From the NCBI RefSeq assembly GCF_001194135.2, contig NC_068983.1, positions 141,635,224-141,699,223 on the forward strand: a stretch of 64,000 nucleotides of DNA, given 5' to 3'. Below are positions 28,377-47,113 of the stretch, piece by piece (within the stretch, counting starts at the first letter, position 1; each line of letters starts with the position of its first letter). A model generated the notes under the pieces. It did no database searches and was not told the DNA's origin. It was given only the letters and a program-made list of their open reading frames with translations. This stretch comes from Octopus bimaculoides. Its lineage: Eukaryota. A program made the position numbers and the translations under genes.

Positions 28377-28575
28377 TTTTCACATCAACTTCACCACTGA
28401 CTATGACGGCAGTAGCATTGCTTTCCATTTCAACCCTCGAATTGGGGATGCCACTGTTGTTTGTAACTCATATGATGAAGGATGGGGTGATGAAGTGAGG
28501 GAAACTGAGAATTTTCCTTTCTTTGAAAGACAACGTTTCACTCTATGCATTGTTGCTGATGAAGATGCCTTTAAA
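28377..28575 (+). CDS. Galectin CRD1 exon b (sugar-binding exon)
   Basis: FHINFTTDYDGSSIAFHFNPRIGDATVVCNSYDEGWGDEVRETENFPFFERQRFTLCIVADEDAFK; full H-N-R / N / W-E-R galectin motif; TTTCAG| and AAA|GTAAGC; 199 nt, phase 2 to 0. Confidence 0.95.
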
Positions 28576-29896: not shown

Positions 29897-30016
29897 GTCT
29901 ATGTCAATGGCACTCATTTCCTGAACTTCTACCATCGAATGTCATATGAAAATGTCAACTACTTGGCCATTGGTGACGGTGTGGAACTATATGAAATGAT
30001 CATGAGGGATTCCTTG
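29897..30016 (+). CDS. Galectin CRD1 exon c
   Basis: VYVNGTHFLNFYHRMSYENVNYLAIGDGVELYEMIMRDSL; TTCCAG| and TTG|GTATGT; 120 nt, phase 0 to 0. Confidence 0.93.
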
Positions 30017-31337
30017 GTATGTATATACTTTTTATAGACTTATTTGCTGTATATACATCTGTTTTCAGCTCTCTTGGTATGTACACATTTTGTAACAATA
30101 CTTTGTACACAAAATTCTCTTAGACTCTGGTTTTCAAATTGCAAGTTTCAAAGTATACAAACCTAAATACATGTCAGTGAATATCTATTTAAGTGTGCAT
30201 ACACAGGCATGTTTCTGCATCATATGTGCACATGCTTGTATGTGCATATGTTGTAAATATATCTGTGTATATGCATATGNNNNNNNNNNNNNNNNNNNNN
30301 NNNNNNNNNNNNNNNNNNNNNNNNNNNNNNNNNNNNNNNNNNNNNNNCATATGTTAATGTATGGCACCAGATAAGTGAAAGTAAGGTAAAAAAAATATAT
30401 AAACATCCAGTCCATTGTGACATTTTGGTGGTAGAAACATTAGTTGGTGATTATGTCTGCTATACAAACTTCTTGTCCTTGACTCCTAAAAGAATGGAAC
30501 TGAATCAGCCAATATACACATGTTTGTTACACAATGTCACTGACTCCTGTTTAGGTTCTATCTTGCCTTTGCAATTATTTACAGATAAGTGGAGTGAGTC
30601 AAACTACGCTAGTTTTTGTTGAAATTATGACAGATATAATTAATACTTCAAGAATTCAAACTCAGAATGTTGAGAAACAAAACTTAATACAGTGAGTTTA
30701 ATCAGTATTAACATACTTAATGTTGTCAGTGTCAGAAGTATAATTAGAGATGGTTATGTGGTGAAGAAAAGACAACAGTACTTCAGTACCTAATATTATT
30801 TTAATCATTTCAACAAGTAAGGAAGACCTCTTCAGACATTGCTTAGTCCTATTAGACTTCCTTGGTGAAGCATAGACCACATCATAGCCATCAAAGAATC
30901 ACTAAGTAGATCTAATAAATTGTACGTGAATAGGTATTAGAAGTTAAACTATTTTTAAAGCCAAATCTCCAAGAATGTTACTCAGGCACCATCATAAATG
31001 GCTCATTAGTTACTCAGACACCTTCTGCATGATAAAACAATAATTAATAATTAATCGTAGAAGTTTTATTACGAAAAATTTGGAAATTTTGAAACCTTAT
31101 TCAGGTACCATATTGAACATCTTCTAAATGATTTTCTTGTAACTATTTTGGTAAGTATGAAGTTTCAAGCATAGCTGGCAAAAGCTAGTGTAATTGGAAC
31201 ATGAAGAGTTGTTCCCCATATTTATTAAAATGTTTGAGATAATGTGAATCATTGTGCTTATTTCTAATCAAATTTTTGGTGCACCCTTCATTAAACATGT
31301 TAACACTAATTTAATTTTGTTTTATTTTCTTATACAG

Positions 31338-31775: not shown

Positions 31776-31864
31776 AGAATCCCATACATTGGTGAAATAG
31801 CTGATCGTATGTCTATAGGTAAAGCTATAGAAATCAAAGGGGTACCAACATTTGATCATGACAG
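31776..31864 (+). CDS. Galectin CRD2 exon a
   Basis: RIPYIGEIADRMSIGKAIEIKGVPTFDHD-R; TCTTCACAG| and CAG|GTAAGC; 89 nt, phase 0 to 2. Confidence 0.92.
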
Positions 31865-33510: not shown

Positions 33511-34336
33511 CATACCATATACATAAACACATGCTCATACACTATGTGTATGTGGATAATATATTGCTGAACTACCCTATCTCAGCCCATATCTCTGCTT
33601 GTTCCAGTTTATCCCCACCTTTACAATCTGCATACAGAGAAACAATTGTCCTTATAGGGTTAAAAAATATAAATTAGCTAGAGCAAGGAGACAGAGAAAG
33701 AGACAATCAAAATGGACCAGAGATGAATAACTTTCTTTCATGTTTTTACATGTCAGTTGGTTTGAACAACTAGTCCCTTCTTCTCAGATCAATAGCCTTG
33801 TGCCTAAAAAAAGCTATTATTACTGTTGCTATTTTATTTTTTATATTGTTATCGTTATCATTATTTTCATTAGCATCTTCTTTCAATTCTGTTTCCATTT
33901 CTTAACCGAGTGTCTTCCTTACGCTCTAGGGTAGAGAAACGTACTGTGTAGATTAGTAAGCTATTAAAACAAATACACCAGATTGTTCATTTACAGAATC
34001 ATGTGATAGGGAAAAGAGGAAGACAGCGAGAAAAAGGAAAAATAGAAAATAGAAAAGTATCATTATTATTATTATTATTATTATTAATAGAAATGATAGT
34101 GACAGACTGACTACTTCTTTGTCTTTAATTGCATCTCTTATTCTGCCAAAGGCAGAATTTGCTGTTCCCTCTTCCAGGATTTTAATAAAAGCAGTACCAG
34201 TAATATCAATTCAGTCATATGTAACCCTGTTTCAGATGTTATGATCTTATGCCAATGTGGAAAATCACTACAGTGGTTGTCAATATCATTATTATTTGCC
34301 TGTTTATTTATTTTTGTGTAAATTCTTTGTTTTTAG

Positions 34337-34354
34337 TGGCACCGATGCTGTAAG
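34337..34354 (+). CDS. 18-nt symmetric microexon in CRD2 (adds SGTDAV)
   Basis: TTCTTTGTTTTTAG|TGGCACCGATGCTGTAAG|GTAAGA; phase 2 to 2, frame-preserving between exons 31776-31864 and 37484-37676, no stop codon. Confidence 0.7.
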
Positions 34355-34807
34355 GTAAGATATTTGTGTCTCAGCTTCCAAGTATAAGTCTTCACTTGCT
34401 GGAATGGTACAGTCAGAAGCATGCAAATATTAATAGCCAGTTATATTTGCAGGACACTGGATGCTGACAATTTCATCTTTCTCATTCATTATCTTCAAAT
34501 ATATCTTTGTCTTCTTGCACATATTTTCACTGCTTAAGCTAATCTCACGCAACATAGTAAGACAAACCGAAATAATTTATTTTTGTAGCATGAATAAGAT
34601 TGTCTTTAGAGGAAAAGGTTGGGCGGGGCCGCAATGTTACCAAAGCCATTTTTTTTTGTTTTTTTTTACACAGTTGAAAAATAAAACTAATGTTCCTGAC
34701 CTGCTTTGAGTTCTTGACTTATTGCACTTATGAAAAGTATGAACATCGCAACATTCAGTTTACACCATCTTATAAAATTGCTCTGCAATTAGAAAAGACA
34801 GAACACA

Positions 34808-34969
34808 AGGCATGGCTGTGTGGTAAGAAACTTGCTTCCCAACCACATGGTTCTGGATTCAGTCCCACTGCGTGGCACCTTGGGCAAGTGTCTCCTACTA
34901 TAGCCTCAGACTGACCAATGCCTTGTGAGTGGATTTGTTAGATGGAAACTAAAAAACAAGCCCGTCATG

Positions 34970-35001
<32 letters not shown>

Positions 35002-35212
35002 TGTATGTGTCTGTGCTTGTCCCCCACTATCACTTGACAACTGATGTTAGTGTGTTTATGTCTCCATAACCTAGAGGTTCGACAAAAGAGACTGATAGAA
35101 TAAGTACTAGACTTACAGAGAATAAGTCCTGGGATCGATTTGTTTGACTAAAGGCAGTGCTCCAGCATGGCCACAGTCAGATGACTGAAACAAGTAAAAG
35201 AATAAAAGAATA
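34808..35212 (+). mobile_element. SINE family B (full length, internal (ATGT)n)
   Basis: GGCATGGCTGTGTGGTAAGAAACTTGCTTCCCAACCACATGG...CCTTGGGCAAGTG...TGCTCCAGCATGGCC...AAGTAAAAGAATAAAAGAATA. Confidence 0.8.
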
Positions 35213-35992
35213 TTAGCTTGATCCTTTATTTTGATCAGAAAAGAAAGTTAGGGGCAGGGCAAAATTTTTATTAAGACTTAACATGGATTTGCAGAGGAGA
35301 GTGGATCTGATTTTTGGCAAGAACAGAGACAAGAATTAATCACTAAGCCAATATAATTCCTTTTCTCTTCACTGCTGATGTAATTTTAATTAAAAATTTT
35401 TGAGCTGTTTATGTTAGCCTGTACTTAACTATTTGTTTTCTGCTCAGAAGTCATACTGGGTAAATTTCTCAGTCATTCATCCTATCAGTGAAAACAAATT
35501 TTGTTAAAACTTGCACATGCTGTCTAAAAACACTTAAACATAAAATTAAACTGCAAAATATGCATCTAGTAGTGCTTCTGTACAAATGAATGCATATGTA
35601 TATATATATATATTACAATGGCTGCTGCATGTGTAGATAGAATGCAAGATTAAATGCAAGGTTGAACATATTATTGTCAGTATATCCATATTTGATTGCT
35701 TTATGATGTTTTTTTCCTTGTATCTTTTTATTATTTCTAAAGTGAATGCCTCTAATAATAGTATATATATCTATATATATCTGGCAATCTGTGGGATGGG
35801 GGTTTTGGATATAAATTCTTTGTTAACTATGCCTTGATCATTTTTGTTGCTGTATAGCTCCAGATCAGTCTTAAATGAGATCTATGATCTAAAGCATTGA
35901 TGTCATGAGTATTTCATTTTATTTTTATTTTTTTAAATGGTGATAAAATAGGGCACCCTTGCCTACACATTATTTAATGTGCCCAAGACAAT

Positions 35993-36200
35993 GAGCTGGC
36001 AGAATCATTAGCACACTGGGCGAAATTCTTAGCAGTATTTCGTCTATCTTTATGTTCTCAGTTCAAATTCCACTGAGGTCAACTTTGCCTTTCATCCTTT
36101 CGGGGTCAATAAATTAAGTACCAGTTGTGTACTGGCATCGATCTAATCGACTGCCCACCACCTTCCAAAAATTTTGGGCCTAGTGCTTAGAGTAGAAAAG
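35993..36200 (+). mobile_element. SINE family A (full length)
   Basis: GAGCTGGCAGAATCATTAGCAC...GCCTTTCATCCTTTCGGGGTCAATAAATTAAGTACCAG. Confidence 0.82.
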
Positions 36201-37254
36201 ATTATTTTATGTGCCTTTTTAGTATGGCTTGAGGGTGATTTAGTTGCTATTTCTTGAAGGTTCAACAACTAAATACTCTCCCTTCATTGGTAATTTTTGT
36301 TGTTTTATACGCATGGCTATTTGGTCATTCTTTCAGGGAAAGTACAAGAAATTAAAACAAAGAAAAAAACAATTTGGTTTCATTAAAAATAAACATTTCT
36401 CTTTTTTCTCTTTTTTAGGACCCTATTTATTAATTAATTTATGTATTTATGTATCTATTTTTTTTCCATAAAATTCTTTATCTCCCCTCTGCAAGGGAAG
36501 TTAAGCACTTGACAATTTCTATATTGCTGCACCATAAAAGCATAATTACCTGATTTAGATGTCAGAATATACACTTCTGAACCTATACGAGCAAACCTGC
36601 ATTCACAATTGTAAACTTGCACATGCAAACATGCACTCACTTGCAAGCATACACTTTTATATGCAAACTAGCACTTGCCTACCATGATCATGAACTGAAT
36701 ACTTTAACCACTTTTCATTCCTTATTGAATACCAGTCATTGACTTTTCTCCACTATGCTTCACTCTGGGCTGTCTTTTCCTCTTACAAGTCTTGTTGGTT
36801 TTGAATTGTCATGGAATCTTCTGTAACTTTGCTGTTTTTTCTAGGTATGACAATGGCCCATTTTTATCTCTGAGAAGTGGTCCATATTAGTCTAGCTATT
36901 ATCTTTTGACTTGCCCAGTAACAGAGGTTTTACTAGGAGCTTGCACTCAATGGCTTAACTCTTAGGGTCATTGAGACACACAAGCCACTACAGTGCAAGA
37001 AGAACTGGACGTTGTAGTGGTGAGAGAGCATGAGACAAAATGCCTCATGGTATTGAGTTTTTACCTTCTAAGTTAAAATCCTGCTGAGATAAACTTTGCC
37101 TTTTATCCTTCCAAGGGTTCAATAAAATAAAGTATAAGCCAACTATTGGAATCAATATAATTGACAATATTCTAATTCAATGTAGAATTTTCAAAAAAAA
37201 AAATTGATGATAAATAGTCTGTTCTTTCTACAATATGCATGTGTGTACAAAATT

Positions 37255-37483: not shown

Positions 37484-37676
37484 ATTTAGCATCAACATCT
37501 GTAGTGACCCTAATGGAACAACAGGTCTTCATCTAAACCCACGTCCTGATCAGAATTCTGTTGTTTTGAACCATTATGATGGCGATTGGGGTGAAGAAGA
37601 GGTGATTTCTGACAACCCATTCCACCCATGGTCTATGTTCAAGCTTATGATTGTTGCCAGCTATGATGGCTACCAA
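37484..37676 (+). CDS. Galectin CRD2 exon b (sugar-binding exon)
   Basis: FSINICSDPNGTTGLHLNPRPDQNSVVLNHYDGDWGEEEVISDNPFHPWSMFKLMIVASYDGYQ; TGCCAG| and CAA|GTAATA; 193 nt. Confidence 0.95.
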
Positions 37677-39598: not shown

Positions 39599-39718
39599 AT
39601 CTTTCTGAATGACAACTACTTTGCACTGTTTCCTTATCGGTGCAGCATAGATTCTATGAAGTATCTCTACATCCATGGTTGTATTAGCATTGCTTCTATC
39701 AATTACTTGAGACCGCTT
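39599..39718 (+). CDS. Galectin CRD2 exon c
   Basis: IFLNDNYFALFPYRCSIDSMKYLYIHGCISIASINYLRPL; TCTTCTAG| and CTT|GTAAGT; 120 nt. Confidence 0.92.
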
Positions 39719-40761: not shown

Positions 40762-40847
40762 CCAATGGACTTCACAAAAGAAATTCCATCTGGATTGCAA
40801 TACAAAGATATCATTAAGGTGACTGGATTTTTCACAACTGGAGATAG
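40762..40847 (+). CDS. Galectin CRD3 exon a
   Basis: PMDFTKEIPSGLQYKDIIKVTGFFTTGD-R; TTTCTGCAG| and TAG|GTAAAA; 86 nt. Confidence 0.92.
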
Positions 40848-42280: not shown

Positions 42281-42473
42281 GTTTGCGGTTAATCTGAAAC
42301 ATGGTAATGAAATTCCTCTCCATCTCAATCCAAGACGAGATGAGGGTGAAATGGTTTTGAACTCTTATACCGATGAGGAGTGGGGCGAAGAAGAACGACA
42401 TCCATTGCCTGTTGGTTTATTGGAGGGTATTCCTTTTGAAATGAAGATTAGAGTGAAAGAAGACAAACTAAAG
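42281..42473 (+). CDS. Galectin CRD3 exon b (sugar-binding exon)
   Basis: FAVNLKHGNEIPLHLNPRRDEGEMVLNSYTDEEWGEEERHPLPVGLLEGIPFEMKIRVKEDKLK; TTTTATAG| and AAG|GTAAGG; 193 nt. Confidence 0.95.
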
Positions 42474-42941: not shown

Positions 42942-43061
42942 GTTTATATAAATGAAAAGTCATTTGCATCATTCCATGCTCGAAAACCAGTTGAAAGTAT
43001 CAACAATATTTCTTATAATGGAGAAGTATATATCTATAATATGCAACTTCTTCGTCGTGTG
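42942..43061 (+). CDS. Galectin CRD3 exon c
   Basis: VYINEKSFASFHARKPVESINNISYNGEVYIYNMQLLRRV; CTTTTGTAG| and GTG|GTAAGA; 120 nt. Confidence 0.93.
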
Positions 43062-44846: not shown

Positions 44847-44935
44847 GATGTCCCTCATGTTGAGAGGTTGCCTGGCACATTGGCTGTGGATCGCTGGATC
44901 AAAATTGGTGGTTCTGTGAGGAAACATGCTGAAAG
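44847..44935 (+). CDS. Galectin CRD4 exon a
   Basis: DVPHVERLPGTLAVDRWIKIGGSVRKHAE-R; TTTTTATTAAAG| and AAG|GTATAG; 89 nt. Confidence 0.9.
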
Positions 44936-45740
44936 GTATAGTTCTGAAACAACACAAAATGTTATCCACTAATATCAGTTTCTTTTGTTTAGGAACAGTC
45001 AGTTCTTTTAGAGTAGTATTTCCCAGCATGTGAGTCATTATCCAATTTTGGTCAGAATATAATTCTGAAAGAGCCACAAATACAAAATCTTTTAGTTTTC
45101 ATATATTTGACAAACTGTAAATTCTTCATGAATATATTATATGACAAACTGTTAGACATGAGAACCACAACACTTAAAGTTAACAAAATAAAAATCAGGA
45201 AAAGTAGAAATATTGTGACCTAACAAACAATGGTCATAGAAGGTTTACAAATATGGATCAGTGTGATTAAAAGTGAAGAACTATTATTCTAAGGGCTGTG
45301 TGTGTGTGTGTGTGTGTGTCCATTTGTAGTGTATAACAGTGGTGTTTATTAAATCTAGAGACAGAAATGATTTGAACACCAAATAATATCAAAATGAGTT
45401 TATATTTCAAAATGTTTATCTAGTGCTTAATCATTTCTGCAAAATCAGGACACTCATGTGATTTTGGGAAAACCAAATAAACATTATGTTAACAGTTCAA
45501 TTATCAACATTTGTAGAAGAATCACCAAGTTTTAGATTTCAATTATAATACGTATGCATAAACATGCAAGCACACATATAAGAACATATGCAAACAAACA
45601 CACACACACACACATAGATTAGCATAGAAAAAGCAGATTCAAAAGTAATAACAATGATTATGAAAATGATGATGATTGTAATAATATTAGAAAATTACTA
45701 TTTTTAAATCTCACAACAAGAGATATTCAGCAACAGTACT

Positions 45741-46032: not shown

Positions 46033-46225
46033 ATTTGCTATTAACTTGAAGTGTGATGATGATATTCTCCTGCATCTTAATCCTCGTCTAAATGAAGAAC
46101 AAGTAGTATTAAATCACTACTGTGGTGGTGAATGGGGTGAGGAAGAAAGAACTTCAGACTATTTCCCTTTTATGGGTTCTGAGCCATTCGAGCTTCTTAT
46201 AGCTTGCCAAGAAGAATCTTTCAAG
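46033..46225 (+). CDS. Galectin CRD4 exon b (sugar-binding exon)
   Basis: FAINLKCDDDILLHLNPRLNEEQVVLNHYCGGEWGEEERTSDYFPFMGSEPFELLIACQEESFK; TTTTTTCAG| and AAG|GTAATA; 193 nt. Confidence 0.95.
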
Positions 46226-46999: not shown

Positions 47000-47113
47000 A
47001 TTTATGTGAATGGAAACTACTTGACTGATTTTGCTCACCGAATGCCTTTTGAGTGTGCCAAGACTTTGGAACTTTCTGAAGATGCTCACTTCTTCCATCC
47101 AGAAATTTATTAA
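47000..47113 (+). CDS. Galectin CRD4 exon c (terminal coding exon)
   Basis: IYVNGNYLTDFAHRMPFECAKTLELSEDAHFFHPEIY-stop (TAA 47111-47113); TGTTTTCAG| acceptor. Confidence 0.93.
   Translation: MYVNGNYLTDFAHRMPFECAKTLELSEDAHFFHPEIY

What the first reader, a model, noticed from the sequence alone, without database searches (positions are those of the whole stretch)
34337..34354. 18-nt frame-preserving microexon inserts SGTDAV into CRD2
Seen: an 18-nt exon with a strong polypyrimidine acceptor and a consensus AAG|GTAAGA donor sits in the 5.6-kb phase-2 intron of CRD2. Inclusion changes ...FDHD-R-FSIN to ...FDHD-SGTDAV-R-FSIN. I found no such exon in the equivalent introns of CRD1, 3 or 4, and the CRD aligns well without it. 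Established: this loop precedes the FxxN strand bordering the extended glycan-binding groove, and microexons are often tissue- or neuron-regulated. Inference: a regulated switch that tunes the specificity of one CRD; gene predictors would probably miss it.
Basis: partly seen in the sequence, partly recalled or inferred. Interest (0 to 1): 0.7.

Follow-up and report, generated by a model that had tools for sequence, protein, structure and literature searches.

The report
Conserved alternative microexon in octopus galectin
The 18-base exon is real: it is spliced into a four-domain Octopus bimaculoides galectin in some samples and skipped in others, and the same exon exists in argonauts and bobtail squids. 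It is already in the public gene annotation, and its effect on sugar binding is untested.

Summary
**Observation: confirmed.** Window 34337-34354 (TGGCACCGATGCTGTAAG) is a genuine cassette microexon in the 5,619-nt phase-2 intron of CRD2 of a four-CRD galectin.

**RNA evidence.**
- Some runs carry only the skip junction (X1, X3, X7, X9, X13).
- One run carries both forms (X11, unitig depth 33 vs 25.5).
- Two runs with very high expression carry inclusion as the main form (X15, X17, depth 11,700-13,800).
- Three raw-read runs show roughly 15, 44 and 50% inclusion.

**Conservation.**
- In Argonauta hians the microexon plus both splice sites is the only colinear conserved block in the intron (64 nt, 84%).
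- In two bobtail-squid-type decapodiforms, transcripts differ by an 18-nt insert at the same codon phase.

**Structure.** The six residues double the loop between two beta strands (6 to 12 aa). They sit directly before the Arg that aligns with galectin-8N Arg45, a galactose-contacting residue.

**Annotation.** Both isoforms are already public: RefSeq XP_052822553.1 ("galectin-6 isoform X3") and UniProt A0A0L8I276 / A0A0L8I238.

**Open points.** A change in glycan specificity is plausible but untested. The tissues could not be identified because sample labels are coded.

The parts
34337..34354 (+). 18-nt cassette microexon TGGCACCGATGCTGTAAG. It adds SGTDAV and regenerates the split Arg codon (AG|T ... 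AG|A).
   Evidence: Sequence. Inclusion contigs in X15, X17 and X11. Mixed raw reads. Present in XP_052822553.1. The Argonauta ortholog is 16/18 identical.
34304..34336 (+). Conserved polypyrimidine tract and AG acceptor of the microexon.
   Evidence: Part of the only colinear conserved intronic block against Argonauta hians (34304-34367, 84% over 64 nt, E 1e-12).
34355..34367 (+). Conserved donor GTAAGATATTTGT of the microexon.
   Evidence: Same conserved block. Sequence.
31776..31864 (+). CRD2 exon a (RIPYIGEIADRMSIGKAIEIKGVPTFDHD plus AG).
37484..37676 (+). CRD2 exon b (A plus FSINICSD...HLNPR...WGEEEV...YDGYQ). This is the sugar-binding core.
   Evidence: (skip junction 31864>37484 with 68/24/46 reads).
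39599..39718 (+). CRD2 exon c (IFLNDNYFALFPYRC...RPL).
   Evidence: Matches XP_052822553.1.
13043..13066 (+). Start codon and first 8 codons (MSYSHTDF) of isoform X3.
19771..19859 (+). CRD1 exon a.
28377..28575 (+). CRD1 exon b.
29897..30016 (+). CRD1 exon c.
   Evidence: (junction 28575>29897 in X1 and X7).
40762..40847 (+). CRD3 exon a.
   Evidence: Protein identical to P0001.
42281..42473 (+). CRD3 exon b.
42942..43061 (+). CRD3 exon c.
44847..44935 (+). CRD4 exon a.
46033..46225 (+). CRD4 exon b.
47000..47113 (+). CRD4 exon c with the stop codon.

Best explanation
**Shown**
- The gene is the Octopus bimaculoides four-CRD tandem-repeat galectin, annotated as "galectin-6".
- An 18-nt cassette microexon lies in the phase-2 intron that splits the Arg codon at the start of CRD2's core exon.
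- It begins with one base and ends in AG. Inclusion therefore adds exactly six residues (SGTDAV) and rebuilds the same Arg.
- Inclusion ranges from undetected in assembled contigs to the dominant form, depending on the sample.
- The exon, its phase, its length and its alternative use are conserved across coleoid cephalopods.

**Predicted**
- The insert lengthens the loop between the strand ending ...EIKGVP and the strand RFSINI from 6 to 12 residues. The rest of the fold is unchanged.

**Inferred**
- The following Arg aligns with galectin-8N Arg45, which contacts galactose.
- Cephalopod CRD2 has also lost the canonical Arg of the WGxExR motif.
- The longer loop therefore most likely reshapes the rim of CRD2's sugar-binding groove and changes its ligand preference or affinity.
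- This would give the animal two versions of one lectin, chosen by regulated splicing.
For: **Inclusion and skipping in RNA**
- Inclusion form: X15 unitig of 30 nt plus the exact 18 nt, depth 9,417 of about 11,700. X17 contig at depth 13,810 reads exon, microexon, next exon.
- Both forms: X11, inclusion branch depth 33 vs skip branch 25.5.
- Skip only in contigs: X1, X7, X3, X9, X13.
- Raw reads: skip junction has 68/24/46 reads. Loose-end agreement of 0.89/0.68/0.64, with a chimeric consensus in X23, implies about 15/44/50% inclusion.

**Public records**
- Both isoforms are public.

**Conservation**
- Argonauta hians has TGGCACCGATACAGTAAG. The only colinear conserved block in the intron is the microexon plus its splice sites.
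- Euprymna scolopes AHG53998.1 carries SGPNAT, while 547-aa siblings lack it.
- In a second decapodiform, transcripts L005 and L008 differ by exactly 18 nt at the same phase, with 2 other mismatches in 1,644 nt. There are 51 contigs with the insert and 39 without.

**Structure**
- AF2 inclusion model: loop 169-180, block pLDDT 63. Skip model: loop 169-174, block pLDDT 87. Flanking strands are unchanged.
- The Arg aligns with galectin-8N Arg45, which hydrogen-bonds galactose O4' (PMC5175137).
- All 8 cephalopod CRD2 sequences have V or I where 23 of 24 gastropod and bivalve homologs keep the canonical Arg.
Against: - There are no binding data for either isoform.
- The insert sequence is loosely conserved (SGTDAV, SGTDTV, SGPNAT, SNPNMV), as expected if length matters more than specific contacts, or if constraint is weak.
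- The AF2 tool returns no coordinates. I could not check whether the loop faces the groove or a neighbouring CRD.
- CRD2 lacks one canonical sugar-contacting Arg, so it may not bind classical beta-galactosides at all.
- Logan contigs drop minor variants, so "skip only" means skip-dominant, not zero inclusion.
- Sample labels are coded, so regulation by tissue as opposed to individual or condition is not demonstrated.
Confidence: 0.55

Rival explanations
1. The microexon is real, conserved and regulated, but it acts on something other than sugar specificity. Candidates are packing between the four linker-less CRDs, oligomerisation, a protein partner, stability, or secretion.
For: - AF2 gives pTM 0.86-0.88 for the whole four-CRD chain. 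This suggests fixed inter-domain contacts in which a loop could take part.
- The insert sequence varies between lineages while its length is fixed.
- CRD2 lacks the canonical Arg of WGxExR, so its groove may be partly disabled.
Against: The insert directly precedes the residue that aligns with a galactose-contacting Arg. CRD2 keeps H-x-N-P-R, V-x-N and W-G-x-E.
Confidence: 0.3
2. The insert is tolerated splicing variation with no functional consequence. On this view the 18-nt exon is kept only because its strong splice sites persist, and inclusion levels drift between samples.
For: - The loop has low predicted confidence (pLDDT 63).
- Only the first residue, Ser, is invariant. It is forced by AG plus a pyrimidine.
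- Pfam scores the inclusion form 6 bits lower (95.1 vs 101.1).
Against: - Exon length, phase, both splice sites and the coexistence of both isoforms are kept in octopods and decapodiforms.
- The surrounding intron is otherwise unalignable between Octopus and Argonauta.
- Inclusion swings from undetected to dominant rather than sitting at a low noise level.
Confidence: 0.12
3. The exon is a chance pseudo-exon or an assembly or annotation artefact.
For: Sequence alone is weak evidence. The crude filter gives 2 hits against 0.27 expected.
Against: There is direct RNA support in three independent studies, independent protein records, and orthologous exons in other genomes and transcriptomes.
Confidence: 0.01

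Closest known systems
Splice isoforms of vertebrate tandem-repeat galectins (galectin-8 isoforms 1/2, galectin-9 short/medium/long)
   Same: Alternative splicing of small in-frame exons gives several versions of one multi-CRD galectin. PDB entries are named "Isoform 1/2 of Galectin-8" and "Galectin 9 short isoform variant".
   Different: From my own knowledge, those exons change the linker between CRDs. Here the exon lies inside a CRD, one residue before a sugar-contacting Arg, and the protein has no linkers.
Regulated bilaterian microexons (3-27 nt, frame-preserving, often neural and SRRM3/4-dependent)
   Same: It is 18 nt and preserves the frame. It sits in a surface loop beside a binding site. 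It has strong splice sites, conserved intronic flanks within an otherwise diverged intron, deep conservation and switch-like inclusion.
   Different: The tissue is unknown. A UGC motif lies about 38 nt upstream in Octopus but is absent from the Argonauta flank. The gene is an immune-type lectin whose squid ortholog is a hemocyte protein (PMC5216023).
Molluscan four-CRD galectins (Euprymna scolopes tandem-repeat galectin AHG53998.1; gastropod and bivalve homologs P0006-P0029)
   Same: Four PF00337 domains in one chain of about 550 aa without linkers. The Euprymna record already contains the orthologous 6-aa insert.
   Different: None of the 24 gastropod and bivalve representatives has residues at this position, and 23 of 24 keep the canonical Arg of WGxExR in CRD2.
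Human galectin-8 N-terminal CRD (PDB 3vkl and others)
   Same: It is the best solved-structure match to CRD2 (E 2e-18). The RF(S/Q)(I/V) strand aligns, with Arg = Arg45 and Ser = Gln47.
   Different: Galectin-8N has no alternative insert before Arg45. It keeps its canonical sugar-contacting residues (His65, Asn67, Arg69, Asn79, Glu89, Trp86; PMC5175137).

Membership tests
Galectin (Pfam PF00337), four-CRD tandem-repeat type | Four Gal-bind_lectin domains in one polypeptide | tested here: met
   Pfam gives 4 stretches, 412.6 bits, E 2.3e-125. The protein is 100% identical to XP_052822553.1 "galectin-6 isoform X3".
Galectin (Pfam PF00337), four-CRD tandem-repeat type | Canonical sugar-binding signature H-x-N-P-R ... 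V-x-N ... W-G-x-E-x-R in CRD2 | tested here: not met
   CRD2 has HLNPR, VLN and WGEEE, but V replaces the final Arg. The same V or I is found in all 8 cephalopod sequences. CRD1, CRD3 and CRD4 keep the Arg.
Cassette microexon | Exon of 30 nt or less, length divisible by 3, with AG acceptor and GT donor | tested here: met
   18 nt, ttgtttttag|...AAG|gtaaga.
Cassette microexon | Both inclusion and skipping observed in RNA of the same species | tested here: met
Cassette microexon | Conserved exon and flanking intron in related species | tested here: met
   Argonauta hians block of 64 nt at 84%. Decapodiform 18-nt insert at the same phase.
Neural SRRM3/4-dependent microexon programme | Preferential inclusion in neural tissue | not testable with these tools
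   Run, sample and study names are coded and no tissue labels are available.
Neural SRRM3/4-dependent microexon programme | UGC motif close upstream of the 3' splice site | tested here: inconclusive
   Octopus has one TGC about 38 nt upstream. The aligned Argonauta flank has none within about 45 nt.

The most novel reading that the evidence does not exclude
A microexon present in both main coleoid lineages (octopods and decapodiforms) acts as a splicing-controlled specificity switch in a hemocyte-type four-CRD galectin. By doubling the loop in front of the galactose-contacting Arg of a non-canonical CRD2, it would give cephalopods two ligand repertoires from one lectin gene. These could be deployed in different tissues or immune or symbiotic states. 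As far as I could find, this would be the first splice-regulated change inside a galectin binding site.
Probability: 0.3. Interest if true: 0.55.

Novelty: already known. Interest (0 to 1): 0.3.

Why it matters
Galectins are the main soluble beta-galactoside sensors of invertebrate immunity. The squid ortholog of this gene is a hemocyte protein whose abundance changes with symbiont colonisation (PMC5216023).

If the microexon changes what CRD2 binds, cephalopods would diversify lectin specificity by splicing rather than by gene duplication. The two natural isoforms would then be a ready-made experiment on how the loop before the S3 strand shapes galectin specificity.

As it stands, the exon and both isoforms are already in public annotation. 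What this work adds:
- evidence that inclusion is switch-like between samples;
- evidence that the exon is conserved across coleoids;
- its placement next to a sugar-contacting residue.

Tried and rejected
- A protein search with the 100-aa CRD2 fragment found nothing, because of the word-index limit. The full-length query succeeded.
- I laid contigs of four other organisms (B-E) on the intron at 80% likeness. Only repeats aligned, no exons. These species were too distant, so the call was uninformative.
- Laying raw reads on the downstream exon printed no loose-end consensus, so it gave no independent count.
- The first exon was found instead from the RefSeq N-terminus.
- A motif search for CRD1 exon a failed. 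It was located from the contig loose end.
- The Octopus vulgaris genomic locus was not delivered because the gene range was too long. Conservation in that species was therefore not tested at DNA level. Its one annotated protein is the skip form.
- **Alternative 13-nt exon using the GCT|GTAAGG donor.** There is no support. The inclusion contigs carry the full 18 nt.
- **Modification sites in the insert.** A CK2-type S-x-x-D occurs in octopods and an N-A-T sequon in Euprymna. Neither is conserved across lineages, so I rejected them as the point of the exon.

Full report
**1. Observation**

The sequence is exactly as described.
- An exon ending ...GATCATGACAG|gtaagc lies at 31776-31864.
- An 18-nt segment, TGGCACCGATGCTGTAAG, lies at 34337-34354. 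It sits between ctttgtttttag and gtaaga.
- An exon starting ccag|ATTTAGC lies at 37484.
- The intron is 5,619 nt and splits an Arg codon after its second base.
- Inclusion reads FDHD-SGTDAV-R-FSIN.

A crude splice filter finds only two frame-preserving candidates in this intron, against 0.27 expected in shuffles. It finds none in the equivalent introns of CRD1 and CRD3, and one in CRD4. On sequence alone the case is suggestive, not conclusive.

**2. RNA evidence**

Raw reads from three 2026 RNA runs (X21-X23):
- The skip junction 31864>37484 has 68, 24 and 46 reads.
- On the upstream exon alone, the letters following 31864 are a mixture of two forms.
- In X21 the consensus is the skip form, with agreement 0.89.
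- In X22 it is the skip form, with agreement 0.68.
- In X23 it is a position-by-position chimera of ATTTAGC... and TGGCACCGATGCTGTAAG+ATTTAGC..., with agreement 0.64.
- The two forms differ at 22 of the 30 positions. The agreements therefore correspond to roughly 15, 44 and 50% inclusion. This is my arithmetic, not a direct count.

Assembled contigs give direct proof:

| Run | Study | What the contigs show |
|---|---|---|
| X15 | P6 | 48-nt unitig = last 30 nt of the exon plus exactly the 18 nt, depth 9,417, where the exon itself has depth about 11,700 |
| X17 | P6 | One 480-nt contig, depth 13,810, reads exon, microexon, ATTTAGCATCAA |
| X11 | P5 | Both branches: depth 33 for the longer, inclusion branch and 25.5 for the skip branch |
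| X1, X3 | P1 | Skip form only |
| X7, X9 | P4 | Skip form only |
| X13 | P5 | Skip form only |

The exon is therefore real, and its use ranges from undetected to dominant. The two runs where it dominates are also those where the gene is expressed 30- to 100-fold more strongly. Contigs drop minor variants, so "skip only" means skip-dominant. Sample labels are coded, so I cannot name the tissues.

**3. The gene**

I rebuilt the coding sequence from the window.
- There are four galectin CRDs.
- Each is encoded by three exons with the same phases: a = 89/89/86/89 nt, b = 199/193/193/193 nt, c = 120/120/120/114 nt.
- There are no linker exons.
- Pfam finds four PF00337 domains.
- The inclusion protein is 100% identical over its full length to XP_052822553.1, "galectin-6 isoform X3 [Octopus bimaculoides]", which is UniProt A0A0L8I276.
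- The 542-aa skip form is UniProt A0A0L8I238.
- The window is therefore O. bimaculoides, and both isoforms are already annotated.

**4. Conservation**

- *Argonauta hians.* The annotated ortholog (GAB1600384.1, 76% identical) carries SGTDTV at the same place. In its genomic locus the microexon is TGGCACCGATACAGTAAG, 16/18 identical. Between the two species' introns, the only colinear similarity outside the flanking exons is a 64-nt block (34304-34367, 84%, E 1e-12). It covers the polypyrimidine tract, the microexon and the donor.
- *Euprymna scolopes.* The "tandem-repeat galectin" AHG53998.1 (553 aa) carries SGPNAT. Transcript-derived proteins of 547 aa in the same 90% cluster lack it.
- *A second decapodiform.* Its protein is 84% identical to the Euprymna protein. 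A 553-aa form (SNPNMV) is seen on 51 contigs and a 547-aa form on 39 contigs. Transcripts from two runs of one accession series differ by exactly 18 nt, CAATCCTAATATGGTCAG, at the same codon phase. There are only 2 other mismatches in 1,644 nt.
- *Gastropods and bivalves.* None of the 24 four-CRD representatives has residues at this position. This shows only that the listed isoforms lack it.

The exon's length, phase, the Ser forced by AG plus a pyrimidine, the terminal AG that rebuilds the Arg, and its alternative use are thus shared by octopods and decapodiforms.

**5. Where the insert sits**

- The best solved-structure match to CRD2 is the human galectin-8 N-domain (E 2e-18).
- The split-codon Arg aligns with Arg45, and the Ser of RFSIN aligns with Gln47.
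- In galectin-8N, Arg45 hydrogen-bonds galactose O4' together with His65, Asn67 and Arg69 (PMC5175137).

AlphaFold2 models of the whole protein, with a 30-32-sequence alignment, are confident:

| Model | Mean pLDDT | pTM | Loop | pLDDT of the 10-residue block | Next strand |
|---|---|---|---|---|---|
| Skip | 89.5 | 0.86 | 169-174 (6 residues) | 87 | 175-180 |
| Inclusion | 90.4 | 0.88 | 169-180 (12 residues) | 63 | 181-186 |

- In both models the preceding strand is 161-168.
- Every other element is simply shifted by six residues.
- The tool gives no coordinates, so I could not check the loop's orientation relative to the groove or to neighbouring CRDs.

**6. CRD2 is already unusual**

- It keeps HLNPR, VLN and WGEEE.
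- V replaces the last Arg of the WGxExR signature.
- All eight cephalopod sequences have V or I there, whereas 23 of 24 gastropod and bivalve homologs keep Arg.
- Loss of this Arg and the presence of the microexon therefore coincide in the cephalopod sequences sampled here.

**7. Interpretation**

- *Shown:* a conserved, alternatively used cassette microexon that adds six residues and preserves the adjacent Arg.
- *Predicted:* a doubled loop with the fold intact.
- *Inferred:* because the loop abuts a sugar-contacting residue at the start of the strand that lines the groove, inclusion most likely alters ligand preference or affinity of CRD2.

The main rival is an effect on inter-CRD packing or another interaction. 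Neutral splicing variation is unlikely, given the conservation of the exon, its splice sites and both isoforms, and the switch-like inclusion.

**8. Comparison with the known, and novelty**

- Vertebrate tandem-repeat galectins (galectin-8, galectin-9) have splice isoforms, but from my own knowledge those differ in the linker.
- Regulated microexons in surface loops near binding sites are a well-known class.
- Full-text searches found no paper on a galectin microexon or on splice isoforms of cephalopod or four-CRD galectins.
- The squid papers mention the galectin only as a hemocyte protein that is more abundant in symbiotic animals.
- The exon itself is in RefSeq and UniProt, and its squid counterpart is in a GenBank protein record. 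I therefore rate it "already known".
- The functional question remains open and is moderately interesting.

Noticed in passing
window 12884-13066: The exon holding the ATG of isoform X3 (13043) continues upstream in frame from an acceptor (tattttcag|TTGATTTTGG). It encodes VDFGFVKKKGPKKPEPEPESEPES(KPES)n...NPEPA from a 12-nt tandem repeat. Argonauta's protein starts MPVDFGFVKKKGAKE..., so longer N-terminally extended isoforms with a low-complexity PESK tail probably exist here too.
   Followed up: partly
window 37484-37676 (CRD2 exon b): CRD2 has WGEEEV instead of WGxExR. All 8 cephalopod orthologs have V or I there, whereas 23 of 24 gastropod and bivalve homologs keep Arg. This is a lineage-specific change in the binding site of the same CRD that carries the microexon.
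   Followed up: partly
window 33929-34127, 34725-35321, 35919-36316: Intronic repeat segments have RNA depth of 100-770 per strand, far above the exons (20-40). They carry many partial reads and back-joints. Mismatches are dominated by A>G (21-26 sites) and T>C (14-16 sites). They could be expressed repeat copies from elsewhere or A-to-I editing. I did not resolve this.
   Followed up: no
window 45012-45029: An 18-nt frame-preserving candidate (AGTAGTATTTCCCAGCAT, donor CAT|GTGAGT) lies in the equivalent intron of CRD4. It would replace the Arg by Ile.
   Followed up: no
whole gene, window 19771-47113: All four CRDs share one three-exon plan with identical phases and nearly identical exon lengths, and there are no linker exons. 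This fits internal tandem duplication of a three-exon unit. AF2 pTM of 0.86-0.88 suggests the four domains pack in a fixed arrangement.
   Followed up: partly
window 28419: Run X7 has T>C in the main contig. It is a synonymous ATT>ATC (Ile) change in CRD1 exon b, probably a polymorphism.
   Followed up: partly
window 16357-16366, 17994-18698, 21764-22024, 30280-30347, 57849-58275, 60339-60502, 62469-62552: Runs of N (assembly gaps). Three of them lie in the 6.7-kb intron between the first coding exon and CRD1 exon a, a fourth (21764-22024) in the 8.5-kb CRD1 a-b intron, and a fifth (30280-30347) in the intron after CRD1.
   Followed up: no
run X6: A "termite gut metagenome" metatranscriptome run holds all sampled words of the octopus exon 31776-31864. 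This is most likely cross-sample carry-over in sequencing.
   Followed up: no
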